In this document: piece after piece, positions 14,020 to 64,000 of the stretch | Layout of the letters: every line of letters starts with the position of its first letter | Position numbering within the stretch: the stretch's first letter is position 1 | Source: Octopus sinensis | Taxonomy: Eukaryota | Assembly (NCBI RefSeq): GCF_006345805.1 | Contig: NC_043000.1 | Coordinates: forward strand, 9,982,001 to 10,046,000 | Direction of reading: 5' to 3' | Length of the DNA: 64,000 nucleotides | Position numbers and translations under genes: made by a program | The notes under the pieces: model-generated | Told to the model about the DNA's origin: nothing | Seen by the model: only the letters and a program-made list of their open reading frames with translations | Databases searched by the model: none

Positions 14020-14207
14020 TGAAATTTGGAGGAAGGAGATAGTCGATTACATCGACCCTAGTACACAACTGGTACTTTTTTTATCGACCCCGAAGGATGA
14101 AATTGAAAGTCGACCACGGCGGAAATTGAACTCAGAACGTGAAGTTTTTTTTTTGGGGGGGGGGTTAGTAGCCCGTGCTCTTAACCACTACGCTGTATGC
14201 CCGTAGG
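14020..14207 (-). mobile_element. Old SINE-A fragment joined to a SINE-F head fragment (14160-14207)
   Basis: The second part is the reverse complement of the 57060-57100 head. Confidence 0.6.
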
Positions 14208-14503
14208 CTAGATTGTGTCAATATTTAACAGATGAGCTTACATTATACAAGCCCATTTGTCGACACAATATTGACCAGTATAAAACTTTGTCTTCTTATG
14301 AATACACAAGCTTCAGTGCAATTACTGTCACATATGCTATATATTGCCCTCTCCAACATTGTCCAGCTGTCCATGAGTAATTTGATGGTCAGTCGATATA
14401 AACAGGAAATCAGAAAGCAAACTTTATGTAATCCGCTACCAGATTTATTATCGATTAATCAACATGTTGATTTACATATCTTCTCTGGAAATATCTTTTT
14501 TCC

Positions 14504-20725: not shown

Positions 20726-23700
20726 AAACTTAGATAAACTTAGATAAACTTAGATATGTTTCGACCAAAGATTGGTCCAGGCCATGTCTAACTTAATAGC
20801 ACCACCTGATAGGATTATTCGAATCCTGTTTAAGTCAAGTTTTGTTCAAGTAGTGAGTTCTTGTTGGGTGAGTTGTATCCAGTTTTGTTCAAGTAGTGAG
20901 TTCTTGTTGGGTGAGTTGTATCCATTATGGGTGGCTTATCTGGTATTCTTTGAAGGAATCTATCCAGACTCTGTTTAAAGTTGATGGGATCCTTTTCCTC
21001 TTTGATCTCCCTCGGGACAATGTTAAATAGGGCAGGGCCTGTTGAGGAAAAGAAATTATGTTGCAGTGTACATGTATGTTGTGATCTTGAATTGGGCAGG
21101 GGACGTAAGCCCGTGGTCCAAGTCTTGGATGAACCTTGAAGCTAATGTTTAGGTCGTTTGGGGCAAAGTTGGCGGTATATTTTCCACATCGTACAAATGA
21201 TTGTACCGCTCACGGCGACGCGGAGGGAGTAAAGTTTCAAGGCTTTAAGGCGATCCCAATAATCGAGAGCAGCCATGCCTTCAATTGTTTAGTGAGTGCC
21301 CTCTGGGGTGACTCAATTCTGGAGATGTTTGTCTTGTGTGAGGAGACCACAGTGGGCAGCAGTATTCAAGGTGTGGCCGTACAAAGGAGGAAAAAAGAAT
21401 GTATGATGACACCTTGTTCTCTGGACCGGAAAGTTCTTAAGATCCAGGAACCTCCTACGAGCTATATCGACCTTCTTGTTGATGTGTGCACTCCACTGAG
21501 ATCGTCATCAACAATTACACCACACCCACATCTCTGATATTGTTAGAGGCTGTGAGCGGTTCCCCTGAAGGAAGAGAGTAGGTTGTTTTAGTGAGGAATT
21601 TCTTCCAAAATGCATCAGCTCAAATTTCCCTCATTCAGTTGCATTTTGTTTCTGTCTGCCCATTGACTCACAGCATATAGATCAAACTGGAGTTGAGTTC
21701 GGTCTGCTTCTTCATTGACGATTGCTGGAGCTTAGTGTCATCAGCAAATATTTTCACTTTGCAGTAATGTACGACACTGGAAAGGTCGTTTACGTAAATT
21801 ATGAAGAGTAGCGGACCCAAAACAGTTCCTGGGGAACACCGCTGGTGACTTTTGCTGGTTTGAGTGGACTCCATTAACTGTTGTGTTCTATTCGCCAGGA
21901 AATACTTAATCCAGTGTAGAACTTTTCCACGGATTCCAACATTTGCCAATTTTGAGAGTAGGATGTTATGGTCTACCCGTCGAACGCTTTACTGAAGTCA
22001 AGATATATGACGTCAGAGTTCGAACCTGTTCCCAAGGCTTTGAGTACATCTTCAATGTGTTGTAAGAGCTGTGTTAGACAGTCCTGCCACAGCGAAAGCC
22101 ATGCTGATTTGCATTTAGAGTTTTGTGGGTCTCCAGGAAGTCAGCTATCCTTGATCTTAACACTCTTTCAAACACTTTAATGATGTGGGAGGTGAGTGAG
22201 ATTGGGTGATAGTTGAGTGCGAGGGATCTGTTTCCTGTTTGAAAACCGGGATGACCGACTGGGATAGAAACTGTTTCGGTATATAACCTGAGTCTAACGA
22301 ATTTCTTCAGAGGTTGGTCAGAGGGACTGCAAGTTGGTATCTCTACATTCCTTCAGGAGACTAGCGGGAAATCTATCAGGGCCTACAGCAGAGTAATGTT
22401 TGACCTCATTTATTGCTGCTACGATGTCAGTGGCAGTGAAGGTTATGTCTGAGATTTTGTGTTGGGAGTCAACTTCGTTCGTTTTCCTTACGTCAATATC
22501 AGTGGGAACACTAAGACCAGAGCAGTATTGTTCTGCAGTTTTCTGCCATTTCTTTAGCATCGTGTTGGGAATGAATGCCGTTATCATCAATCAATGGCCC
22601 AATGGGTGAAACAGTGGTTCTATGCTTATTTGCATAAGAATAGAACACATTTGGGTTCTGTTTGATGTTTTGATTGCCCATTGTTCCCACAGCTCTTTGA
22701 TTTTCAATGGAGGTTTTCATGTTGGTCTGCAGATGAAGTTTTTCCAGCTCTAGTCTTTTCATTGTTGTTGAATGTGGATGTTGTTGTGTGGGAATATTTT
22801 AATTGTTGATTTTTTGTTGAGTCTTTTGATGCGCCTGATGAGTGTTTTTTCTTTTTAGGGAGCCGGTTTCTGTTTGTGTTAGTAGATTTCTTGGGAGCGT
22901 TTGTTTAGAGCATGTATAGGTGACATGTTTTCAAAGTGCTGCCACGCGGTCTCAATATGAGAGGAATTGAGAGTAAAAGACCAGTCGATGGAAGACAGAT
23001 CCTTTCTGATTGTTCCCCAGTCCGCTTTGTGGAAGTTTATGTTGTCAAATGGGTGCATGGAGTGGGATTGGCTGGTTTGGTTTTTATATGTCGGGAATTA
23101 AGATTGCAGAGTACCATGTCGTGGTCTGAGAGGAGAGTTTTTTCGACTGAGATACTGTGAACGTAGCTAGAGTGATTGGTCAATACCAGATCCAAGATCG
23201 TTTTATTCTGTCTCGTTGGTTCAAGCACTAGCTGAGTCAGGAAATACTCATCCATCAGATTAAAGAGCAGTTCTACTGCTGCTCTATCTGATGTAGAGCA
23301 CTTGCCTAACTTCAGAGTATTTGTGGGCCAGTTCACATGAGGGAGGTTAAAATCACCCATCACTAGTATGTTTCCGGAGTGGTACTTCCGAAGGAAGGAC
23401 GTGACTTTGGTAAGGCACTCTTCAAAGTACTTTAGGGGTGCCTGGGAGGCCTGTAAAGACCAACAATGGTTATGTCCTTGGCTTGTTGTATAGTGATACC
23501 GATTCACAGTAGCCATTGGAAAATATGTCCTTGGCATCAAGTGAAAAGGAGTCATGGATAAAGATGGCTGTCCCTCCCTTATTTCGGTCTGTGCGATCCG
23601 CACGAACAATGGTGAAATCTTTTATTTTCACCTCTGCGTCCATATGGGTGTTGTTCAGGTGAGTCTCGGTAAGGATAAAGAAAGGGAAGCAATGTGCCAT

Positions 23701-24281
23701 TTCGGCAAGCCAACTCTCTATATATGGGATCTTCCATTTTGGGGCAATAATTGATGGGTTGATGCCACGTACATTTAACAGGAATGTCGAGGTAAGGGAA
23801 GTTGTTGGTAATGGGTGAGTGGTCCTTGTGATTTGCATAGATGGTGGTGATAGCTCGCTGGATCTCCTGGCTTAGGTCGGCCTTCATATTTTCTAGGTAT
23901 GTCAGTAAAAAAGAGTTACTTGTTTGGTTTGCCACTTGGTCAGAGGATACATATTTCATGTTGGCGTTGTTTGGTTGTTTTTTCATGGTTCTGTCTACGT
24001 TGTTTGATTGTGGGAGGGGAAACGTGGTTGTATTTTGTTCTTGTTGTTGTCCTAGATTACTATTGTTCCTGTTTATATTTATTCTGTGATCGTTTTGTGC
24101 CCTTCAGATGGTGGTGGTTGCATTCTGGTTCAGGACATCCTTTGTGAGACAGAAGTTTGGCACAGTTTAGGATGGAATAAGGTGCATCCATTGCCTTTAT
24201 GCATCCTTATTTAGGATCAGAACCATGGATTCTGTATTTAGGACAGTATTTGGGGTGGAGGTGGGGGCAATTTTTCCTGTT
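20726..24281 (-). mobile_element. CR1/L2-group LINE family 1, 5'-truncated and decayed (ORF1 end, APE endonuclease, RT)
   Basis: EN motifs ILTETHL, RADR..RNKGGTAI, ILVMGDFNLP, LDLVLTN, SDHDMV; RT motifs GPDRFPASLLKEC, PGTVLGPLLFIIYVNDL, IFADDTKL; 3' tail (ATCTAAGTTT)n; 43-bp tandem duplication at 20838-20923. Confidence 0.9.
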
Positions 24282-34689: not shown

Positions 34690-37613
34690 AAATCCTTAAA
34701 ATCCTTAAAAATGTTTTAGCCCGAAGGCCGCGGCCATGCTGGGGCACCACCGCTGAATGAGCTACACTAGTTTGTGAATCCACCTCTGATACGTGGCACT
34801 TGATCAACAAGGAGTTCGATGCTGCTGCCCGCATCCGTGTCTCCTGTCGTGAGGTAGGTTCATCTGGGACTCCCAACAAGAAGAGATCCAGTTTAATTTT
34901 AAAGAACCCCACATCCACACCATGTAAGTCTCTCAGGCATTAGGGAGGATGTTAAGAGCTGTGGTCCTCTGAAACCCAAGCTGTTGCAGTATCTGGACCT
35001 GTATTTTGATGGTGATGTTGGAATCCTTGGCACCACGCAGCGGCGCCCCGTTCTGCGGTTGGAGTAACTTTGAATGCCAAAGTTTGGGACAAGACCCTCC
35101 AGGATTTTCCAGATGTATATCACTGCATATCTCTCCCGCCTCCGCTCCAGGGAGAAGAGGTTTAATACCTTCAGTCTTTCCCAGTAGCTGACATTTTGCA
35201 TTGAGACGATTTTCTTTGTGTAGCTTCTCTGAGTTGCTTCGAGTTCTGCTGTTTGTTTTATATTGTGTGTGACCAAAGTTGGGAGCAGTAGTCCAAGCGG
35301 CTGAGGACAATGTTTTCCATAGGACCATCAGTGTCTCCTTCTCTCTTGTTCTGAAAGTTCGGAGAATCCATCCAGCTAGCCGTCTGCATTTTATCACCAG
35401 ATTAGCAATATGCATTTGGAAAGATGCATCATTGCTCATGTCAATGCCCAGGTCACGCACTGATTTTGACTCAGGGATTGCATTCATTCTTCCTGGGCCA
35501 GTGTATCCAGTCTTCACGTCATTTACCTTTGTGTGCCAGTAGCGCAGGGCCTGGAACTTACCTGCATTAAACTGCATGTTGTTGTCCTCAGCCCACCTGT
35601 ATATTGTGTCCAGCTCATGTTGCAGATGCACAATATTTTCAGGGTTTTGTATTGCGTGGGAGACTTTTGTGTCATCTGCATAGCTAGCAATGGTGGTCAT
35701 CGTAGCAACTGAAGGCATGTCTGAAAGGCCACTATGAACATCAGTGGCCCCAAGACAGTGCCCTGTGGGACACCGCTTGTTATTTGCGTTTCCCTGGAGG
35801 TGGCTCCATTGCTCACAACTGCCTGTTTTCTGTCTTTTAGGAAGTGTGCAGCCACTCTCCAAGTTTCCCGCCTATGCCGAGACCACGCAGTTTGTGACAG
35901 ATCATACCATGGTCGACTTTATCAAAGGCTTTTGCAAAGTCAGATATATTACATCCACATTTGAGCCATTTAGTAGCTGTTTCAACACCCAGTCATAGTG
36001 TTGCAGGAGCTGTGTTAGGCAGCCTCTACCTGGTCGAAATCCATGCTGGGTGTCAGACAGTAAGTCATTTTCTTCAAGGAACATGATTAGTTTCTTACGG
36101 ACTATTCGTTCCATGACTTTGCTGATGTGTGAGGTCAGAGAGATAGGCCTATAATTTTTAGCATCTGCTCTGCTACCTCCCTTATGGATAGGGCATATTA
36201 CCCCCTCTTTCAGTTTGACTGGGAGCTTACCACTTGCAAGAAAGCTCTGAAAAAGAAGCTGTAGCGGTTTTGCAAGGGCTCGTTTGCACGATTTGAGAAG
36301 GATCGCTGGGAATCCATCAGGTCCAGCAGCTGAGTTTGTGTCAATCTCATCAATGGCTAGTGTGATATCATCTTCTTCGATGTTGATGTACTCAATTTTT
36401 GTCTCTTTGGTCGCTGGTAAAGTGGCAAAGAATTCTTCTGGGTTGTTTACTTGCCTGTGTCCTAGAGGTGTAGTGAACACACTTTGGAACTGTTCATTCA
36501 GTATTTCACTTATCCTCGTGGGATTTCCTGTGAGAGAGCCATCTTTTTGGAAGAGAGGTCCTATTCTCTGGTGCACTGTGGCTGTCTCTTTGGCAACTTA
36601 AAGAAAGCTTTAGGGTTTGATTTTATATTTTCTATTACCCAAGCTTCTTTATCTGCTCTCTCCTTTTCATGGGACTGATGTAGACTTTTCTCAGTTTCCA
36701 TTAGCATTCTTTCGAGCCGAGACTTCTCACCACTTTTGGTGTGCTTGCTCAGGCGGTTTGCAATCCTTGTCCGTCGTCTCATAAGAATCCTCCTTTCTCT
36801 AGGATCCTGTTTTTGTTCTTGTGTGTGCTGGCCCTGCACATTGGGACATATTTGTCACATATGGCTTGTATTATGGACATGAAGTGTTTGTGTTTCATGT
36901 TTATGTCCGGTGTGGAGAGACATTCAGGCCAATCCTGTTTGAGGATCTCTTTCTCAATCGACTTCCAGTTGGCTTTATGAAAGTTTAAGTTGGAGAGATG
37001 GTGGGTGCTTCGTATAGGCTGTGTGTCTGCGGGGGCTTTTGTTCCATACATAGACAGCTCTATTATGTTGTGATCCGAGATCATTGTCGGCATCACATAA
37101 CATTATGGATAATATCCATATTGTTTGTAAAGCAGAGATCCAGTATATTATCTGCCCTTGTTGGTTGCAGAACTATTTGCTCCATGAAAGAGGTATTTGT
37201 GAGATGGAGCAGGGACTCCACCTGTGCCTGCTGATGGTGTGTCATCCCTGGGAGCATCTGCCCCCCAGGCCATTCCACATTGGGGAGGTTAAAGTCACCC
37301 ATGAAGAATACACTGTTGTGCTTTCAAGGTTGGTGAGGACTTCTCCTATTTTTGTTAGGCAGTCTTCAAACATGCCTGAGTGTTTTGGGGCGTCTGGTGG
37401 GCGATATGTAGTGCATATGACGATATTCATTTTGTCTTATGTGTACAATTTGAGTTTCACATACTGAGTTGAATATGACAGCAGGACCTTGGGGCGTGAG
37501 GTCATCTCGGATGTACATTGCAACTCCACCATGGCTCCTCCCTTTTCTATCTGTGCGTATGACTGCATATTGCGGCATGTGTATTTCTGCATCACCTATA
37601 TCGGGTTCAAGAT
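34690..37613 (-). mobile_element. CR1/L2-group LINE family 2, 5'-truncated at the EN start, decayed
   Basis: EN motifs IRTDRKGRSHGGVAMYI, YRPP, MGDFNLP, ILDLCFTN, SDHNII; RT motifs GPDGFPAILLK, NYRPISLTS, QHGFRPGR, IASYADDTKV; (TA)n at both ends; tail (TTTTAAGGA)n. Confidence 0.92.
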
Positions 37614-51104: not shown

Positions 51105-51680
51105 AAGTAACTTGGGCAAGGATAAACCTACAAATACCTAGGAATAAATGAAGGCTCTGGCAATCGGCATGCAAGCATGAAAGCGATCAGGAAGGAATGT
51201 TACAGAAGAGTTCGAGCAGTCCTGAAATTTGAGCTATATGCACATAAAGTGTTAGTTATAAATTTCCAAGCAGTTCCAGCTGTTATTTATAGCTTCAATA
51301 TATTGAAGTGGAATATCAGCGAAATATAGAAAATTGACAAGAAAATTCATAAGCTGTTGACTTGCAATAAGATGCACCGCCTAAAGTCCGACGTAGATCA
51401 TCTTTACCTTCCCAGAACTCAAGGAGGCCGATGTTTGAACCAATTTGAAATCTCTTACAAATCCACCACAATTAGACTGGCCTAGTACCTTGAATTCTAA
51501 CTGGGTCCCACCTGCAAGGTCAGGCGCTGTCTATGTTGATATCAGGTCACCATGTCGCGCACAGAGGGTTGTGATGTATATGTCTGATGTACCCTTATCA
51601 GACAGGTAGTCATAATGGCTATATTAGGCTTCGTGCCCCGTGTTACTTAGCTAACACGTGCTGCTCTCCCACTCAGTAAT
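51105..51680 (+). mobile_element. Dong/R4-like LINE fragment: RT C-terminal part joined to the 3' terminal module and (TAA)n
   Basis: TYKYLGINEG, CYRRVRAVLK, MHRLKSDVDHLYLPRTQGG; then AATTCTAACTGGGTCCCACCTGCAAGG, homologous to the 56390-56635 end. Confidence 0.7.
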
Positions 51681-53658
51681 AATAATAATATTATTATTTT
51701 TTTAATGCAGACACAAGGCCAAAAGTTTTGAGGAAAATGTTTATTTGATTACTTCTATACCAGTATTTGACTTGTACTTTATTTGATCGGCTCTGTTAAG
51801 GCGGCAAGCTGGTAGAATCGTCAGCGAGTCGGACAAAATACTTTGCGGCATTTTTTCGGGGTCTTTACCTTCTGGACTCATATTCCGAGTTTGGTACTTA
51901 TTTTATGAAATGTGTCGATGAAATAAGGACCACTTGAACACTGAGTCAATGTGATCGATCTATCTTCTCCCTTAAAATTGCTAGACTCGTGCCAAAATTT
52001 GTTACTTTTATTTTATCGGATCTGAAAAGATAACCGGCAAAGTTGGCCTGAGCGAGGTTTGAACTCGAAGAGTGAAAGAAATATAGCAGAGTATTTTGGC
52101 TTACGACCTACCAGCTCTGCCCCTGCACCACCTTCGTTCGCACAGTAAGAATAAGCAATTTATATCAGAAACAGTAAAGCCAAGCCATCAATACAGAACT
52201 ATCGATGATCTTTAAATCTTATAAAAACAAGTAAATAAATATATGAAGTTAAAAAGTAAAAAGAAAATAAGCAGTGGTCGACATTATATTGGAAATAATC
52301 TCGTTTTATATCTCTGACATTCGAAAGATATATATCCAATGTGGGTGTTAGTATATTTGGTTTTTTTATTCACTAAAACATGTGCAGACGTCGAGATATG
52401 AATATTTCAGTTGTTAGGTATTAGGAACATTACATAAACAATTCAAATCATCGCACATTTTGTGAGAAATGGTTTGCTTCCCATTGGAAATTTCTAATTC
52501 CTTACTTCACACATTTCTTCCTTGTCTACAGATTTCCCTAGTGCATACATACACATATGCACTCTGTTATATGTTATATATATTTATGAAACCATTGGAC
52601 GCTGTTGAATAGTGAAACGGCTGATGAATACAACACCAACATCTACAGTCTTGTATCTATGGTGAAATTTGTGCTGTTGCTATTATGGTGAGGATCGACA
52701 AGGAGATATAGTTAGTGTGAGGACTGGAAAACAAAGGATAGTAATGCACTATACATCTAGTTTGTTTAAAAAGATTTATAGTCTGCTGAAGTAGCGATTG
52801 AATAGGTAGAGAGTACAAAGAGCATGTCTATGGGCCTGTGTTTGGATTGAGTTGGTGATTTAATATTTGCCAACAAATCGGTTGTGCTTTGTACTGCATG
52901 TACAAACATCTTAACCCCAGAACGTTTATACACAGTATTAATTCAGGCATATCAAATGTAATTAGTGCACTGTTGTGCGATGAATCAATATTTCAAAGTA
53001 ATTACCAAAACTCTTAGTAATTAATTGAGGCTGAGAGAATCTTTGCCTTCGGTGATTCAGTTTTGGTAATGTTATATTGGTGGTATTGAGGTCGCTGTGA
53101 AAGATTCTCATAGATGGTTAGAATCTGCATTTGTAGCGACTTCGAATATTGTAGTTGTGGGTTGATCATAATTTTATATGTGCAGTGATGTAGTCTTTGT
53201 CACCTCGTCTATTTGTTGACATAATGAAACACCAAGAATCTCTCAATTACCATGTATAGCTAGCTATCCATTTGTACTATACGGTACACGTCGAAATGCT
53301 GACCCGCTATTAATAGTCTACTCATAATTTTGTTATAAATTTTTCTTCAGATTTAAATAAAGCAATCAATACTTTATAAAATATATATGGAGCGGGAACG
53401 TGCGTATCTGCGTGTATATAAAGAACTATTAAAATACTGATACCATCATAATTAAGACAAAGTACTCATTAACAGAGAGTGGAAGTATTTGTTTATTCTA
53501 ACGAATATAAATAACTATCTTCGCTCTATATTTTGTTTTTCAACACTGCCTGTAGTTCCACCAGTATTTTAAACGGAATCTACGTATACATAGATTTATG
53601 CACGTACGCACGTACACACACACACCCACGCATGCATGTATATATGTATGCATATACG

Positions 53659-55651: not shown

Positions 55652-56181
55652 CTGATATATAAAATGCGTACAGCTATAAATTTTGAGTATGTATGTGTGT
55701 ATATACGCACATAATTGTGTGTGTGTGTGTACATACGTGTGTGTTTATATACATGTTTGTGTATAAATGTCTACATGTAACACTTAATCTATGTTTATCT
55801 TACTGTTTGTGTGAGTGTATGTATGCGTGTCTGCTGAGTGAGAGAGAGAGAGAGAGAGAGAGAGACAAACAGACAGGTATAAACTTATTTCAGTTTAAAC
55901 GAGAATTCATTTCAATGCTGATTTAGACATCACATGCATTCGTTAAGACATAAAAGTAAGGGAAGTACAACTCATTTGTTAAAATATAGCTGACAGCTAA
56001 ATGACTAAGGAAATAAACTCACTACTCAAACGAACTATATCTGCAAAAGCCTGAAAATGTATTACACTACAACAAAAGTAACGCGTTATACTCAAACACT
56101 AAAAGAAGTATTCCTGCCTAGCCGTATGCTAAGCAAGAGAAAAGAAATCTTTGCTTCTTGTTTACCAACTAAAAAGTTCAA

Positions 56182-56358
56182 TACAGTTCTATATTTAAGA
56201 GATGAGGAATTATGTACATTATTTACATTCGACGGATATTTGTCCTCGTCTTGTTTGTTGCTAACACAACGTTTCGGCTGATATACCCTCCAGCCTTCTT
56301 CGGGTGTCTTGAGGAAATTTCGAACCTGGGTTCTCATTCCTAAGGTATTTTTCGATGC

Positions 56359-56389
<31 letters not shown>
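56182..56389 (-). mobile_element. SINE-F 3' part with HHR motif (56263-56308, U4C) and (TAA)n
   Basis: Inverted homolog of 57150-57321. Confidence 0.85.
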
Positions 56390-56996
56390 GAGTGCGAGAG
56401 TAGTGCATGCCATCAAAATGACACTGGGGTAAAATATACGAAACCCAGTATACCCATCATGACTACCCGTCTGATAAGGGTACACTAAGCACATGCATCA
56501 CAACCATATGTGCGCGACATGGTGATCTCATACCAAGATAAGCAGCACATGACCTTGCAGGTGGGGCCCAGTTGGTGATCTCATATCAAGATAAACAGCA
56601 CATGACCTTGCAGGTGGGGCCCAGTTAGAATTTTCTTCTGGTCGAGTAGCCCATCCTGCTTAAATGGTCCCTGAATAAGGGCTGTTTAAGGATGTTGAAC
56701 GAAACACCCATGTTTCCAGAGGTGAATTATTCAATCCCCAAAGAATCCCTCTCAACACACGGCTATGATGCTCCCCCACTACTTCTGCTCGTGATCAGAG
56801 ATGCACATATCGTCGGCCACTAAGGGACATGCTCAACTGGTTAAGGTCAAACAACCGACAAGCAAATCTGTGGTATTGAGCAGAATATTTGCTGTAGCCC
56901 ATCTTTTATACCAAGACAAAACAATGTACATGATAACACTTCCAATCACTTAAGATCAGAAACCATGAGACCACTGCCTGGTACTGCATCAGGCAT
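56390..56996 (-). mobile_element. Non-coding Dong-type 3' module in (TAA)n
   Basis: (TAA)n on both sides; 3' end homologous to 51490-51680; 53-bp tandem duplication at 56521-56626. Confidence 0.7.
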
Positions 56997-57017
56997 TTAT
57001 TATTATTATTATTATTA

Positions 57018-57059
<42 letters not shown>

Positions 57060-57060
<1 letters not shown>

Positions 57061-57321
57061 GCCCGTGGGCATATGGTGTAGTAGTTAAGAGCGCGGGCTA
57101 CTAACCCCAAGATTCTGAGTTCGATTCCAAGCAGTGACCTGAACACTAATAATAATAATAATAATAATAACATCGAAAAATACCTTAAGAATGAGAACCC
57201 AGGTTCGAAATTTCCCCAAGACACCTGAAGAAGGCTGGAGGGTATATCAGCCGAAACGTTGTGTTAACAACAAACAAGATGAGGACAAATATCCGTCGAA
57301 TGTAAATAATGTAAATAATGT
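57060..57321 (+). mobile_element. SINE-F: tRNA-like head, (TAA)n, hammerhead-bearing tail
   Basis: A box TGGTGTAGTAG, B box GAGTTCGATTCC, HHR at 57220-57265. Confidence 0.85.
57220..57265 (+). ncRNA. Minimal type I hammerhead ribozyme motif, canonical core
   Basis: GACAC-CTGAAGA-A-GGCTG(GAGGGTATAT)CAGCC-GAAA-CG-TT-GTGTT; palindromic helix III AACGTT. Confidence 0.75.
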
Positions 57322-57887
57322 AAAAAGTTCAAGTTAGAAACTTATGTAAATTTCTGTTGGGGATGTAATCCAAAACCAAATCAGCTAAATACCTCTGCCC
57401 TCTGACCTCGAAATAGACTTCAGAATTCTCCACATCCATGTCATAGCATGGCTCAATATTCACATTACACCATCTACCTGTGCCCCTCAAACTTCCTTAT
57501 TCTTTTCTATATTTTACCCAACTCCCTATTGTTTTTCTCCCTTGTTTCTGTTCCCCCTCTGCTTCTACATCCTTCCTTTTATGTCATCACTTTTTATTCT
57601 TTCTTTCTTTCTTTCTTTCTTTGTTTTTCCATTCATTACACACACACCTATTATTCAAAACGTTAGCTTTCGGTCTACAAACCTAATTGCATACTAAAGA
57701 CAGCTTTTATCACTGAAGCTTTGGCTTGTACTTTTATTCTTTGTTTTTTTCCTTTTTTGTCGTTGTATCTTGTGTTATCCAGATTACAGGAGGGACGTTG
57801 TGCTCTATGCTACGGAAGCTACAAGCGGTCTGTAAATGTGAGAGAAATTGTGAGCATGACGCCCACAAACCATTTTAGGTAATTCCT

Positions 57888-59814: not shown

Positions 59815-59848
<34 letters not shown>

Positions 59849-59877
59849 TAATAATAATAATGATAATAATAATAATG

Positions 59878-59913
<36 letters not shown>

Positions 59914-59928
59914 TTAATAATAATAATG

Positions 59929-59993
<65 letters not shown>
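59815..59993. repeat. (TAA)n tract (Dong target)
   Basis: Direct reading. Confidence 0.95.
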
Positions 59994-59996
<3 letters not shown>

Positions 59997-62435
59997 GGGG
60001 AACGTTTAAGATGTAAGAACGATAAAACAGAGCTCCGAAATCTATCCACAAACATCGAAAACAAGGACATCGTAAGGAGCCAAAGATTTACTAACAAAGG
60101 ATTGGACTGTATCCGAGTAAGTAATACTCATTGAAATTTATTACTATTTTCGAAACGAAATGATATATTTTGACTCGATATCATCTCCACCTCTAACACA
60201 ACACATGTAAACATGCGTGATACATTACGATCCACCAACACCAGATCATCCCCGACCCCAAACACCATGTACAAATAAACTACGAAGAAATTAAATACCA
60301 CCGATATTATTCAACCCAAGAATAACAATCGGGAAGTACGTACTTTAAACTTACAACACAAAATGAACGAAAAACTACACGTGGAAAACAATGTGACAAC
60401 AGAAATGAACGGACCGGTACCCTACGAAAATGACGACCGTCAAAATAATGGGTCGGACGTTGTTCCTCATGTCCCGCAAATAAAACCCAAAAGACATAAA
60501 TGGACACGTGAGGAATACATTTCTATCCTACATGCATACTTCACAGCAATGCTCTACCCAAAAAATGAAAACACAACAACACATACATATAAAATATGGA
60601 AGGAAAATAACATAAATATAGACTTGGATACAGCAATGAACCCTAATAAACTAGCTAACGTACGAAGATACATTCCCAACGCAAAAAAAAATATCAGAAA
60701 TAGAAATAGAACATCTAAACGAAAAAATACACCAGGAAAATGTAGATAGAAGCCACACAACAATGCCCAATAATATAAACACTGAAACAGTAACACACGA
60801 AGACAAACGTAACATTCCCAACAAACACGATGTAAATAAAAAACAATAAACCCAGACCGTAAGGATGCATAATAATACACGTTTAACAGCAAGCCAAAAC
60901 ACGGCAAACATACATATAAATAAGAAAGAAAGCGACACAAATCTAAAACCTGGAAACAACGAAGGGGAGCCTAATGATTATGATAATATAAAAAGTAAAA
61001 TAATCAAAGAACTGAAAACCACAGAGCTCAAAATAGACCACCGACCATACCTCCCAAAAATCAAAATAGACGAAACAACAACACCAATTATAAACAGCAT
61101 AAACCTAGCCGTCACGGAACTAATAGCCACTGAAACAGAAAGCGATATCACTGAGCTAAATGACTTAGTATACGCAGCAGCCACTGCAGCCACAAAAGAA
61201 GCTGGATACTCACTCAAACCCATCCAAACAGGAGTACCACCACCCAAACAAACCCTGTGGATAAATAACATCCAAAACAAAATACAAAAAAATTAGAAAA
61301 GATCTTTCGATTCTTAATGAAATCAGTAGACAATCAACGCTACTGAGCAACAAAAAGAAAACAAAAATACTCCGCAAATATAACATCACAGAAAAAGATT
61401 TACCTGAGATAAAAGAAAAGCTGAAGCAAGATATCCTTGCCAAAGCACAAAGGATCCGCCGGCACGAGAAACGCCAGCGCTTCTTTGAACAAAACAAAAA
61501 GTTCAACTCCAACCCCAAAAAGTTCTACCAAGAACTTGGCAAAAATAAAATAGAAATCACTGCAGCACCAACGTCAGAAGGGGAAGAATTCTGGAGAGAA
61601 ATATGGTCGGCGAACGAACAACCAAAATAAAGGATGAATTAAAACAACAAACTCAGCATCAGAGCAACTTTGGACCCCCATAACAACTGAAGAGGTTACC
61701 CAGGCACTGCAAAGACTAAGCAACTGGAAGGCACCTGGGCATGACAAGATCCCCAACTTCTGGTTGAAATATCTAACAGGAATGCACAAAAAGCTGGCTG
61801 AAAACTTTAACAACATACTAGCAGAGCCAGAGACAATGCCTGAATGGCTCACGAAGGGGAAAACCATCTTAATTCCCAAATCAAATGAGACTGCAAAACC
61901 AGAAAACTACAGACCAATAACCTGTCTCCCTACAATGTACAAGGCATTTACTGCAGTGATATCGCAAAAGTTGAACAATCACCTGGACGAAAACAACCTG
62001 TTTCCAGAAGAGCAGAAAGGATGCCGCAAAGGCTCATATGGCTGTAAAGATCAACTAATGATTAATAAAGCCATAACTGAAGACAGCCACAGAAAGAAGA
62101 AAGGCCTCAGTATGGCTTGGATCGACTACAAAAAGGCGTTTGATAGCATCCCCCACACATGGATCCTTCGAACACAAGCCATTAACAAAGTAGCACCAAC
62201 AATTATAAAATTCATAGGGCACTCTATGAATAAATGGCAAACAGTGCTACAGCTTCAAACAAAAGAGGGACTCATGAAAACCAAAGCCATCCCCATTAGA
62301 AGAGGAATATTCCAGGGAGACACACTATCTCCACTCCTTTTCTGCTTGGCACTGTCACCTCTATCTGATATGCTAAATAGAACTGGATGCGGATATAAAT
62401 GTTACGGCAAAACGATCAGCCACCTTTTATATATG

Positions 62436-62670
62436 TATTTCTATATTGCCCACAAGGGGCTAAACATAGAGAGGACAAACAAGGACAGACAAACGGATTA
62501 AGTCGATTACATTGACCCCAGTGCGAAACTGGTACTTTTATTTATCGACCCCGAAAGGATGAAAGGCAAAGTCGACCTCGGCGGAATTTGAACTCAGAAC
62601 GTAACGACAGACGAAATAACGCTAAGCATTCCGCCCGGCGCGCTAACGTGTCTGCCAGCTCACCGCCTTA
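62436..62670 (-). mobile_element. SINE-A inserted in the YMDD codons of the Dong RT
   Basis: 11-bp TSD TTTTATATATG at 62425-62435 and 62698-62708. Confidence 0.92.
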
Positions 62671-63387
62671 GATATGGATGACCTAAAACTATATATATTT
62701 TATATATGGATGACCTAAAACTATACGCTGCAAATGACAAACAGCTGGAAACACTATTAAAGACAGTTCATGGATTTACCAAAGAAATAGATATGAAATT
62801 TGGATTAGAAAAATGCGCCAAAGAGGAAAACTAGTTAAGAGTAACAACATCACACTAGATAAAACCAATGAAATAAAAGAATTAGACCAAAGCCAAACTT
62901 ACAAATACTTAGGAATCCATGAACTAGATAAGACACAACACACACAAATGAAAGAGAAAATAAAAAAAGAATATTATAGACGAGTTAGATCAATACTAAA
63001 ACAGAGCTCAATGCTAAAAACAAGATAATAGGTATTAACACTTTAGCTGTCCCAGTTATAAGTTACAGCTACAATATCCTTAACTGGACACTAAATGAAC
63101 TGACCAAAATAGATAGGAAAACAAGAAAAATAATGACAGGATCTAGGATGCATCACCCAAAATCTGACATAGAAAGACTATATATACAACGTATAGAAGG
63201 TGGTGGAGGCCTTATACAGCTGGAAAACTACTATAGAATAACCACCATAGGACTGCAAAAATATCTACTTCAGAAGGAAGGAAAACTGATACAAATAGCG
63301 GCAAAACACGAGCAAAACAAAGAACTGTTCTCAGTATTTAAGGAAGCTGACAAATACAAACAAGAAATCATACCACCTAATAAATAT

Positions 63388-63474
63388 GAAGAAGAAGAAG
63401 AAGAAGAAGAAGAAGAAGAAGAAGAAGAAGAAGAAGAAGAAGAAGAAGAAGAAGAAGAAGAAGAAGAAGAAGAA
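63388..63474 (+). repeat. (GAA)29 in frame within the Dong ORF
   Basis: Direct count. Confidence 0.93.
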
Positions 63475-64000
63475 ACAACAAAAGCTATAAAACAAATGAA
63501 ATCCAAACTAAAAATAGAACAGCAACGAACCATGATAAAACGATGGCAAGAAAAGCCCCTGGACTAAACTAAACGCAAAAGAAATAGACAAAGAAAAATC
63601 CCAGCAATGGTTGAGAAGCTCAGGACTCAAAGCAGAGACAGAGGGATTTTTAATTGCAGCACAAGACCAAAGCCTCCGCACCAGAAATTACCAAAAACAT
63701 GTAATGAAAAGAAATATAACAAGTAACTGCAGAATATGTGATGGACAAGAAACAATAAATCATATTATCTCTGGCTGCCCAGTCCTGGCTAAGAAGGAAT
63801 ATATTCACAGACATGACAGAGTTGGAACCTACATATACTGGAAGCTATGCCAACATTATGGAATAACAACAGAAAAAAGATGGTATAGGCACACACAAGA
63901 AAAGGTCACAGAAAACGAGAAAGCAACCATACTCTGGGATATGCCGATACACACAGATAGAGAAATTAAGGCCAACAGACCAGATATAGTTGTCAGAGAC

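What the first reader, a model, noticed from the sequence alone, without database searches (positions are those of the whole stretch)
56171..57332. One 11-bp TSD brackets an inverted SINE-F composite
Seen: AAAAAGTTCAA at 56171-56181 and 57322-57332 flanks an inverted SINE-F tail, (TAA)n, a Dong-type module, (TAA)n and a full SINE-F. Inference: the two opposed copies arrived in one integration event with an inverted terminal segment, the architecture known for PLE insertions, and the Dong module entered the (TAA)n later. This independently supports PLE-type mobilisation. If transcribed, the arms form about 170 bp of dsRNA.
Basis: partly seen in the sequence, partly recalled or inferred. Interest (0 to 1): 0.72.

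Follow-up and report, generated by a model that had tools for sequence, protein, structure and literature searches.

The report
Inverted ribozyme-bearing SINE pair, one insertion
Two opposed copies of a short octopus-type retroposon that carries a hammerhead-ribozyme motif sit inside one 12-bp target duplication; this is the known insertion signature of Penelope-like retroelements, here left by a small tRNA-headed element that cannot move on its own.

Summary
The duplication is 12 bp (TAAAAAGTTCAA, 56170-56181 and 57321-57332). It brackets a 178-nt, 95% inverted repeat (56209-56386 / 57142-57319).

- **Ribozyme motif.** The repeated arm holds a minimal type-I hammerhead (57220-57265) with the published PLE-specific traits. 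It is the only descriptor hit in 64 kb, with none in 300 shuffles.
- **Tail.** The 27 bp at 56182-56208 are family sequence, a 3' "tail" present on the inverted arm only. Related copies end either before or after it.
- **Recurrence.** Related loci repeat the architecture. L006 has a 10-bp duplication and L001 a 12-bp one, each around an inverted plus direct composite with the tail at one end. L002 and L011 are further head-to-head pairs.

The layout head-(TAA)n-body-tail is a real family (L004). The 607-bp (TAA)n-tailed module is non-coding. It probably inserted later, but neither that nor its Dong identity is shown. The empty site and the autonomous partner could not be reached.

Verdict: a new member of a known kind. 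The element family is more interesting than this single locus.

The parts
56170..56181 (.). Left copy of the 12-bp target-site duplication TAAAAAGTTCAA
   Evidence: Exact direct repeat with 57321-57332; about 0.07 copies of the 11-mer expected by chance in the window.
56182..56208 (-). 27-nt 3' 'tail' of the family (element orientation tcctcatctcttaaatatagaactgta), present on the inverted arm only
   Evidence: It translates to ...NSSSLKYRT, which is also in the Octopus bimaculoides ORF P0001. It aligns with the 3' ends of L004, L008, L009 and both arms of L002. It is absent from the right copy.
56209..56358 (-). Inverted copy of the body; its hammerhead motif (56263-56308) has U4 changed to C
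   Evidence: 96% identical to 57171-57320. The core reads CCGAAGA instead of CTGAAGA.
56359..56389 (-). (TAA)n of the inverted copy and/or the tail of the module; reads (ATT)n on the + strand
   Evidence: Tandem Repeats Finder: 10.3 units, 100% matches.
56390..56996 (-). 607-bp non-coding fragment of a (TAA)n-tailed retroposon ('Dong-type module'), with an internal 53-bp tandem duplication at 56520-56625
   Evidence: (ATT)n lies on both sides. The only relative is the 5'-truncated copy at 51493-51634, which also ends in (TAA)n-like sequence. No stop-free frame exceeds 57 codons.
56997..57058 (-). (ATT)n, 20 units; the rest of the microsatellite that the module interrupts
57059..57146 (+). tRNA-related head with A-box-like (TGGTGTAGTAG) and B-box-like (GAGTTCGATTCC) sequences
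   Evidence: It shares its first ~75 nt with the head of an unrelated tRNA-type SINE at 14020-14205. Homologous heads precede the body in L004, L006, L010 and L011. ARAGORN and Rfam do not call it a tRNA.
57147..57170 (+). Internal (TAA)8 linker between head and body
   Evidence: A (TAA)n or A/T-rich linker holds the same place in L004, L005, L006, L009 and L010.
57171..57320 (+). Direct copy of the body, short form, ending ...gtaaataatg
   Evidence: The same 3' end occurs in L005 and L010, and a nearly identical one in L011 and L006.
57220..57265 (+). Candidate minimal type-I hammerhead ribozyme: gacac CUGAAGA a GGCUGG-loop8-UCAGCC GAA ACGU U|GUGUU, with predicted cleavage between 57260 and 57261
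   Evidence: It is the only descriptor hit on either strand of the window, with 0 hits in 300 dinucleotide shuffles. The minimum-free-energy fold of the 56-nt segment is exactly helix I plus helix II with an open core. Rfam models do not detect it.
57321..57332 (.). Right copy of the 12-bp target-site duplication

Best explanation
The segment 56182-57320 is the product of one retrotransposition event of a short non-autonomous element, carried out by the reverse transcriptase/endonuclease of a Penelope-like element (PLE).

**The element.** It consists of a tRNA-related head, a (TAA)n linker, a ~150-nt body with a minimal hammerhead motif, and an optional 27-29-nt tail.

**The proposed event:**
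1. The target was nicked on both strands 12 bp apart, at CAA^GTTAG on top and TTA^GTTGG on the bottom.
2. Both 3'-OH ends primed reverse transcription on element RNA.
3. The bottom-strand primer started at the inner initiation site. This gave the direct, head-containing short-form copy, which ends at 57320.
4. The top-strand primer started 27 nt further downstream. This gave the inverted copy, which keeps the tail (56182-56208) and stops within the (TAA)n linker.
5. Joining the two cDNAs head to head and filling the stagger produced an inverted repeat inside one 12-bp duplication.
6. Later, a 5'-truncated (TAA)n-tailed retroposon fragment, probably Dong/R4-dependent, inserted into the (TAA)n of the inverted copy.

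**Shown:** the anatomy, the family nature of the tail, the two alternative 3' ends, the hammerhead motif, and the recurrence of the architecture in relatives.

**Inferred:** the priming on both strands, the identity of the enzyme, and the order of events.
For: 1. **Duplication and arms.** A 12-bp exact duplication brackets the composite. The arms are 95-96% identical.
2. **Both arms diverged from one source.** Each arm has private changes relative to the O. bimaculoides copy P0001.
3. **The tail is family sequence and sits on one arm only**. Across family copies there are two discrete 3' ends 27-29 nt apart. Short ends: winR, L005, L006R, L010, L011. Long ends: winL, L002 (both arms), L004, L006L, L008, L009.
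4. **This matches the published PLE signature.** PLE insertions have an optional 30-40-bp tail at one end (PMC8557442, PMC3846280). In vitro, a PLE protein nicks and extends both strands and starts reverse transcription at two adjacent internal sites that delimit the tail (PMC11167929).
5. **Hammerhead motif.** It carries the traits listed for metazoan PLE ribozymes (PMC4209133):
   - the G10.1-C11.1 pair
   - palindromic positions 15.2-16.2 with no loop 3
   - a 5-bp helix I

   It is unique in the window and absent from 300 shuffles.
6. **Independent relatives show the same build with different inner breakpoints:**
   - L006/L007: 10-bp duplication, with the tail on the inverted arm.
   - L001: 12-bp duplication, an inverted short-form arm, 2.8 tandem 129-bp units and a tail.
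   - L002 and L011: head-to-head pairs.
   - 11 of the ~150 representative ORFs over this repeat superfamily read through a sense/antisense junction by motif scan. P0011 (locus L002) is a twelfth, read by eye.
7. **Opportunity.** Penelope families and Dong-R4 LINEs are both reported as recently active in Octopus vulgaris (PMC13282606).
Against: - No PLE reverse-transcriptase or GIY-YIG ORF lies in the window, and no autonomous element sharing the body or tail was found. None of the 156 protein hits is a long RT protein.
- Rfam hammerhead models do not score the motif even at E <= 10. Covariation over 10 copies is not above controls. A protein-level proxy for one helix II pair is not significant (p = 0.35). 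Ribozyme activity is untested, and the descriptor was written after I had seen the sequence.
- The tail is 27 nt, just under the published 30-40.
- The empty site was not seen.
- Four bases (TAAA) at the right junction could belong to either the element's 9-bp repeat or the target, so microhomology priming of the LINE kind is not excluded at that end.
Confidence: 0.8

Rival explanations
1. Twin priming by a LINE enzyme (L1-Tx1, CR1, RTE or Dong/R4) acting on the SINE RNA. The second nick primes on a second RNA molecule and gives an inverted 5' segment inside one duplication, with no PLE involved.
For: - LINEs with APE endonuclease and RT, and an R2-type LINE, lie in the same window.
- The right junction has up to 4 nt of possible microhomology (TAAA) between target and element.
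- Inversions within one duplication are known for L1 (established knowledge: Ostertag and Kazazian 2001).
Against: - Twin priming inverts a different, adjacent part of one RNA. Here 173 nt are present in both orientations.
- The two discrete 3' ends, the one-sided tail, the PLE-type hammerhead and the partial tandem plus inverted build of L001 are PLE features. [quoted passage not shown]
Confidence: 0.1
2. Two independent insertions of the family in opposite orientation at nearly the same place, with the flanking 12-mer match being coincidental or belonging to only one of them.
For: SINEs make up ~11.6% of an octopus genome (PMC13282606), so nested and adjacent copies are common. The (TAA)n linker is itself a target for other elements.
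Against: - Each 12-mer abuts the 3' end of a different copy.
- Neither copy has a duplication of its own: the inner ends are microsatellite and head.
- About 0.07 copies of the 11-mer are expected by chance in 64 kb.
- L006 and L001 repeat the one-duplication pattern.
Confidence: 0.04
3. DNA-level rearrangement after a single insertion (fold-back or template-switch inverted duplication of the 3' part), or a MITE/foldback DNA transposon with 178-bp terminal inverted repeats, or an assembly chimera.
For: Long inverted repeats with a central spacer are what such processes give.
Against: - The inverted arm carries 27 nt of family sequence that the direct copy lacks, so it was not copied from it.
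- The ends are asymmetric, and a 12-bp duplication is unusual for DNA transposons.
- The arms differ at 9 of 178 positions, and the same type of locus appears in contigs from several sequencing runs (L006/L007, L011/L014, L002/L003). This argues against a chimera.
Confidence: 0.03

Closest known systems
Insertion architecture of endonuclease-positive Penelope-like elements (Penelope/Poseidon, Neptune, Naiad; Arkhipova 2006; PMC3846280; PMC8557442; PMC11167929)
   Same: - An inverted 5'-truncated copy abuts the 5' end of the direct copy, and the whole unit lies in one short duplication (8-10 bp in Adineta vaga; 12 bp here).
- An optional ~30-bp tail sits at the 3' end of only one of the inverted repeats.
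- A hammerhead motif lies in the repeated unit.
- The target is AT-rich.
- Unrelated sequence can be carried between the repeats.
   Different: - There is no RT/GIY-YIG ORF and no tandem pseudo-LTR in this locus.
- The repeated unit is headed by a tRNA-like Pol III-type sequence and a (TAA)n linker.
- The tail is 27 nt rather than 30-40.
Minimal hammerhead ribozymes of metazoan PLEs (Cervera and de la Pena 2014, PMC4209133; Lunse et al. 2017)
   Same: - Type I topology with a short helix I (5 bp).
- An unpaired nucleotide between A9 and G10.1, and the G10.1-C11.1 pair.
- No loop 3, and a palindromic ACGU that would allow helix III only in a dimer.
- Pairs of motifs on opposite strands a few hundred bp apart.
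   Different: - Helix II is 6 bp here, against 7-8 bp in the schistosome families.
- Activity was not tested, and Rfam does not score the motif.
- Most related copies have core mutations.
SMalpha, the SINE-like retroposon family of Schistosoma with an active type-I hammerhead (Ferbeyre et al. 1998, as cited in PMC8490949)
   Same: A short, dispersed, non-coding, high-copy element that combines SINE-like features with a hammerhead ribozyme, in an invertebrate genome that also holds PLEs.
   Different: - No sequence relation was shown.
- SMalpha has a canonical hammerhead, whereas this one is the minimal PLE type.
- The tail, the two 3' ends and the inverted-pair build are documented here but not, to my knowledge, for SMalpha.
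Animal non-LTR retrozymes (PMC7229834; bioRxiv 10.64898/2026.07.22.740005)
   Same: Non-autonomous hammerhead-bearing repeats proposed to be PLE derivatives. Distant relatives of the body form 129-bp tandem arrays (L001; P0002-P0006).
   Different: - The window copy is not tandem.
- Retrozymes carry canonical type-I ribozymes in ~170-400-bp units and spread as circular RNAs.
- No tRNA-like head has been described for them.

Membership tests
PLE-type insertion (made by an EN+ Penelope-like element) | An inverted 5'-truncated copy directly at the 5' side of the direct copy, with the whole unit inside one target-site duplication | tested here: met
   A 12-bp duplication brackets arms 56209-56386 and 57142-57319. 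The same holds in L006 (10 bp) and L001 (12 bp).
PLE-type insertion (made by an EN+ Penelope-like element) | An optional ~30-40-bp tail, family-encoded, at only one end; two alternative 3' ends in the family | tested here: met
   The 27-nt tail is on the left arm only. It is family sequence. Five copies have short ends and seven have long ends.
PLE-type insertion (made by an EN+ Penelope-like element) | A hammerhead ribozyme motif in the repeated unit | tested here: met
   Motif at 57220-57265 with the PLE-specific traits; 1 hit in the window against 0 in 300 shuffles; fold. Catalysis was not tested, and covariation is inconclusive.
PLE-type insertion (made by an EN+ Penelope-like element) | Partial tandem copies forming pseudo-LTRs | tested here: not met
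   There is no tandem copy in the window locus. A distant relative, L001, has 2.8 tandem units. The literature describes this feature as frequent, not obligatory.
Penelope-like element proper (autonomous) | An ORF with a PLE/telomerase-like reverse transcriptase and a GIY-YIG endonuclease | tested here: not met
   The composite has no ORF longer than 81 aa. The ten longer stop-free ORFs scanned against Pfam gave only LINE-type domains (RVT_1, Exo_endo_phos, zf-RVT). The element is therefore at most a dependent of a PLE, not a PLE.
tRNA-derived SINE | A 5' head derived from a tRNA, with Pol III A and B boxes | tested here: inconclusive
   The head shares ~75 nt with another tRNA-type SINE head in the window and has A-box-like and B-box-like sequences read by eye. 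ARAGORN and Rfam call no tRNA. Transcription was not tested.
tRNA-derived SINE | Head and body recur together as one family unit | tested here: met
   Head-linker-body order in L004, L006, L010 and L011.
tRNA-derived SINE | A 3' end shared with a partner LINE | not testable with these tools
   No octopus LINE or PLE consensus library was available. The 3' part shows PLE-type features instead.
Animal non-LTR retrozyme | Tandem repeats of ~170-400 bp, each with a canonical type-I hammerhead; circular RNA intermediates | tested here: not met
   The window holds single direct and inverted copies with a minimal hammerhead. Circular RNA is not testable here.
Dong/R4-clade element (for the 607-bp module) | Insertion into, and a tail of, (TAA)n | tested here: met
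   (ATT)n lies on both sides. The relative at 51493-51690 ends in (TAA)n-like sequence.
Dong/R4-clade element (for the 607-bp module) | Sequence homology to the 3' end of a Dong/R4 LINE, or RT/REL-endonuclease coding capacity | not testable with these tools
   The module is non-coding. The R2-type LINE at 60.0-64.0 kb runs off the window before its 3' end.
L1-type twin priming | The inverted and direct segments are adjacent, essentially non-overlapping parts of one RNA | tested here: not met
   173 nt are present in both orientations, and the inverted arm has 27 nt that the direct copy lacks.

The most novel reading that the evidence does not exclude
'SINE-F' may be a true SINE-PLE partnership. 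In this reading, a Pol III-driven tRNA-headed element has as its 3' recognition module a PLE pseudo-LTR fragment (minimal hammerhead plus the stretch between the two reverse-transcription start sites). It would belong to an old, widely spread superfamily of such modules: 156 ORF representatives, some in 129-bp tandem arrays. Because the PLE enzyme primes on both strands, many new copies would be born as ready-made inverted repeats, giving a steady supply of ~150-200-bp hairpin RNAs in cephalopod genomes.
Probability: 0.45. Interest if true: 0.65.

Novelty: new member of a known kind. Interest (0 to 1): 0.5.

Why it matters
**For PLE biology.** PLE insertion chemistry has only recently been reconstituted in vitro, in one lizard element. 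That work showed nicking and extension of both strands and two internal start sites that delimit the tail. A small, abundant, easily aligned dependent element could serve as a natural record of that mechanism in a mollusc. It shows two discrete 3' ends, a one-sided tail, and inverted partners inside one duplication. It could be mined genome-wide for nick spacing, target preference and breakpoint spectra.

**For repeat annotation.** Part of the large 'unclassified SINE' fraction of octopus genomes may be PLE-dependent and would be best recognised by the hammerhead-plus-tail module.

**Speculative point.** Every such insertion creates a potential long RNA hairpin. In a lineage known for heavy A-to-I editing, this may be worth testing. 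Nothing here shows it.

Tried and rejected
**Searches that found nothing**
- Rfam found no family at gathering thresholds over the whole window, and only chance-level matches at E <= 10 over 56100-57400. No hammerhead or tRNA model scored. ARAGORN found no tRNA.
- An exact scan of JGI metagenome contigs for 25 nt of the ribozyme region gave 0 matches.
- Exact-ORF look-ups failed for the flank ORF 57329-57490, the left-arm ORF and P0001. So neither the empty site nor the O. bimaculoides copy could be read as DNA.
- The word-indexed protein search returned only P0001. The full HMMER search opened the family.
- The module has no relatives in the fetched loci and no coding capacity. Its Dong identity stays a label.

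**Tests that were inconclusive**
- Covariation of the hammerhead helices over 10 copies is not above shuffles. The register does beat slid registers (74.5% against 23-51% paired), but the structure was derived from one of the sequences.
- The protein-level W/Q against R/R proxy for one helix II pair gave p = 0.35.

**Ideas rejected**
- The 48-81-aa ORF over the body is not the N-terminus of a PLE protein. None of the top 150 hits is an RT-length protein, and the peptide motif TPEEGWRVYQPKRC is simply the translated ribozyme.
- The 11-mer is not family consensus (element ends). The left flank of L002 (ttaaaagttcg) resembles it. This is a single case, either coincidence or target preference.
- Independent insertions, DNA-level inverted duplication, a MITE and an assembly chimera are all rejected (see the rival explanations).
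Full report
**1. What is in the sequence**

The window looks like cephalopod DNA. It carries octopus-type SINEs, and the only word-indexed protein match to the element is an Octopus bimaculoides entry.

The exact direct repeat is 12 bp, TAAAAAGTTCAA, at 56170-56181 and 57321-57332. About 0.07 copies of the 11-mer are expected by chance in the window. A third copy at 61496 lies in the A-rich ORF of an unrelated LINE.

Between the two repeats lie, in order:
- 27 bp (56182-56208)
- an inverted copy of a 150-nt body (56209-56358)
- (ATT)10 (56359-56389)
- a 607-bp module (56390-56996)
- (ATT)20 (56997-57058)
- a tRNA-related head (57059-57146)
- (TAA)8 (57147-57170)
- the direct body (57171-57320)

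The arms, including the microsatellite, are 178 nt and 95% complementary. They have 9 mismatches, and the longest perfect run is 40 bp. As one RNA they fold into a long hairpin. The body occurs nowhere else in the window, and both flanks are unique in it.

**2. The 27 bp are a family-encoded tail on one arm only**

The left-arm ORF reads ...NVNNVHNSSSLKYRTV. The O. bimaculoides ORF P0001 reads ...NVNNVHNSSSLKYRTI. So the 27 bp, which read tcctcatctcttaaatatagaactgta in element orientation, belong to the family.

The right copy stops 27 nt earlier, at ...gtaaataatg. The arms differ at 7 of 151 unique positions, 6 of them transitions. Each arm has private changes relative to P0001. So both diverged from a common source, and the left arm cannot be a DNA copy of the right one.

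**3. A PLE-type minimal hammerhead**

The body contains gacac-CUGAAGA-a-GGCUGG-(8 nt)-UCAGCC-GAA-ACGU-U|GUGUU at 57220-57265.

I wrote a descriptor from the traits that Cervera and de la Pena list for metazoan PLE ribozymes:
- a short helix I
- the G10.1-C11.1 pair
- palindromic positions 15.2-16.2
- no loop 3

It hits once on either strand of the 64 kb and never in 300 dinucleotide shuffles. The minimum-free-energy fold of the segment is exactly helix I plus helix II with an open core. The left-arm copy has U4 changed to C.

Caveats:
- Rfam does not score the motif.
- I wrote the descriptor after seeing the sequence.
- Covariation across 10 copies is not above controls.
- Activity is untested.

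**4. Relatives from outside**

A full HMMER search with the 52-aa left-arm ORF found 156 representative 'proteins'. They are spurious ORFs over a widespread repeat. The conserved peptide TPEEGWRVYQPKRC is just the translated ribozyme.

Some are ~43-aa tandem repeats. About half carry the tail motif: 71 with and 64 without. A motif scan flagged 11 that read through a sense/antisense junction. P0011, read by eye, is a twelfth.

The DNA of the contigs that encode them shows the following:
- **L004:** head, degenerate (TAA)n, body with an intact core, and tail. So head-linker-body-tail is a real family unit.
- **L005 and L010:** short forms ending ...aataatg, like the window's right copy.
- **L008 and L009:** long forms.
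- **L006/L007:** a 10-bp duplication ATAAATAGTA around [inverted tail plus the last ~50 nt of body] - head remnant - A-rich linker - direct short-form body. This is the window's build with a different inner breakpoint.
- **L002/L003 and L011/L014:** further head-to-head pairs. In L011 the inverted copy includes most of the head.
- **L001** (another taxon): a 12-bp duplication TTACATTTTTTT around an inverted short-form arm, 2.8 tandem 129-bp units and a tail at the right end.

Among cephalopod loci with visible 5' context, 4 of 5 have an inverted partner. Among loci retrieved through an ORF that does not itself cross a junction, the count is 2 of 3. The 11-mer is in none of the nine loci held when the scan ran, and the element ends visible in L010 and L011 also lack it.

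**5. Mechanism**

The literature describes EN+ PLE insertions as follows:
- 5'-truncated copies, often in partial tandem
- often an inverted 5'-truncated copy at the 5' end
- the whole unit inside one duplication
- a 30-40-bp tail at only one end

In vitro, a purified PLE protein nicks and extends both strands. It starts reverse transcription at two adjacent internal sites that delimit the tail.

The window locus fits point by point. The bottom-strand primer started at the inner site, giving the direct short copy. The top-strand primer started 27 nt downstream, giving the inverted copy with the tail. The 12-bp stagger gave the duplication.

The inferred nick sites, CAA^GTTAGAAAC and TTA^GTTGGTAAAC, resemble each other, and the target is AT-rich. 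This is a single case and only suggestive. The different inner breakpoints in the window, L006, L002, L011 and L001 show that the inverted build is made anew at each integration rather than inherited from a composite master.

**6. The module**

The segment 56390-56996 is non-coding. It is minus-oriented, has (ATT)n on both sides, and carries an internal 53-bp duplication. Its only relative in the window (51493-51634) is a shorter, 5'-truncated copy that also ends in (TAA)n-like sequence. This is what a (TAA)n-targeting, (TAA)n-tailed retroposon would leave.

Two pieces of context fit:
- Dong-R4 LINEs are reported as the most active LINEs in O. vulgaris.
- An R2-superclade LINE sits behind ~180 bp of (TAA)n at 59816-64000.

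L006, the parallel composite, has no such module. Later insertion is therefore likely. It is not proven, and capture by template switching at the time of integration is not excluded.

**7. Rivals**

- **LINE twin priming.** It is disfavoured by the 173-nt overlap of the two orientations, the one-sided tail and the hammerhead.
- **Independent insertions.** They are excluded by the absence of separate duplications.
- **DNA-level duplication.** It is excluded by the tail.
- **MITE.** It is disfavoured by the asymmetric ends.
- **Assembly chimera.** It is disfavoured by the arm divergence and by the recurrence of such loci in several sequencing runs.

**8. Comparison and novelty**

The architecture is the known PLE one. 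The ribozyme is of the known PLE minimal type. Hammerhead-bearing dependents of PLEs are known (retrozymes), and so are SINE-like elements with a hammerhead (SMalpha).

What may be new is the combination of a tRNA-related head with a PLE-type 3' module as a dispersed family in cephalopods. I could not check Repbase or Dfam, so I file this as a new member of a known kind.

Not reached: the empty site, the autonomous partner, transcription and catalysis.

Noticed in passing
window 14020-14222 (- strand): A different tRNA-type SINE whose first ~75 nt match the head of the composite. It then continues with the core '...tcatccttcggggtcgataaaaaaagtaccag'. It is flanked by a direct repeat, ATTGACACAATCT.
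   Followed up: partly
window 59816-64000 (+): A LINE whose reverse transcriptase is closest to solved R2 proteins (E 3e-23, against 1e-15 for L1 ORF2). It lies directly behind ~180 bp of (TAA)n, which is consistent with a Dong/R4-type element in its preferred target. It runs off the window end.
   Followed up: partly
window 51493-51690 (- strand): A shorter, 5'-truncated relative (83-88% identity) of the 607-bp module, ending in (TAA)n-like sequence. It has one copy of the 53-mer that is duplicated at 56520-56625.
   Followed up: partly
window 20800-24100 (-) and 34900-37100 (-): Two further decayed LINE fragments: RVT_1 plus Exo_endo_phos domains in the first, RVT_1 in the second. Neither has a GIY-YIG or PLE-type ORF.
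   Followed up: partly
L001 3068-3523 and proteins P0002-P0150: A widespread superfamily of hammerhead-plus-tail repeats, seen as spurious ORFs such as MANGIRTGDPRGFNKGRSSKFREGSRVRQTPEEGRRTYRPKRCGNNNKDEDNSPKTLNDKNHQASSQKFRQ. Some form 129-bp tandem arrays, and many have inverted junctions. The source organisms of the ENA and Logan contigs were not identified.
   Followed up: partly
window 56160-56181 / 57333-57345; L002 690-715: The sequences 3' of the two inferred nicks are alike (GTTAGAAAC and GTTGGTAAAC), which gives the target imperfect dyad symmetry. The left flank of the L002 composite (ttaaaagttcg) resembles the window's duplicated 12-mer. This may reflect a target preference or may be coincidence.
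   Followed up: no
window 57314-57320; L005 173-179; L010 202-208: Three of the five short-form copies end in AATAATG, where long forms read AATAATT before the tail. The final G could be an untemplated or start-site-specific base.
   Followed up: no
window 57299-57324: The 3' end of the body is a 9-bp tandem repeat (AATGTAAAT, 2.9 copies) that runs 4 nt into the right duplication. This leaves TAAA ambiguous between element and target.
   Followed up: partly
window 61496-61506: A third exact copy of AAAAAGTTCAA lies inside the LINE ORF region. It is unrelated to the composite.
   Followed up: yes
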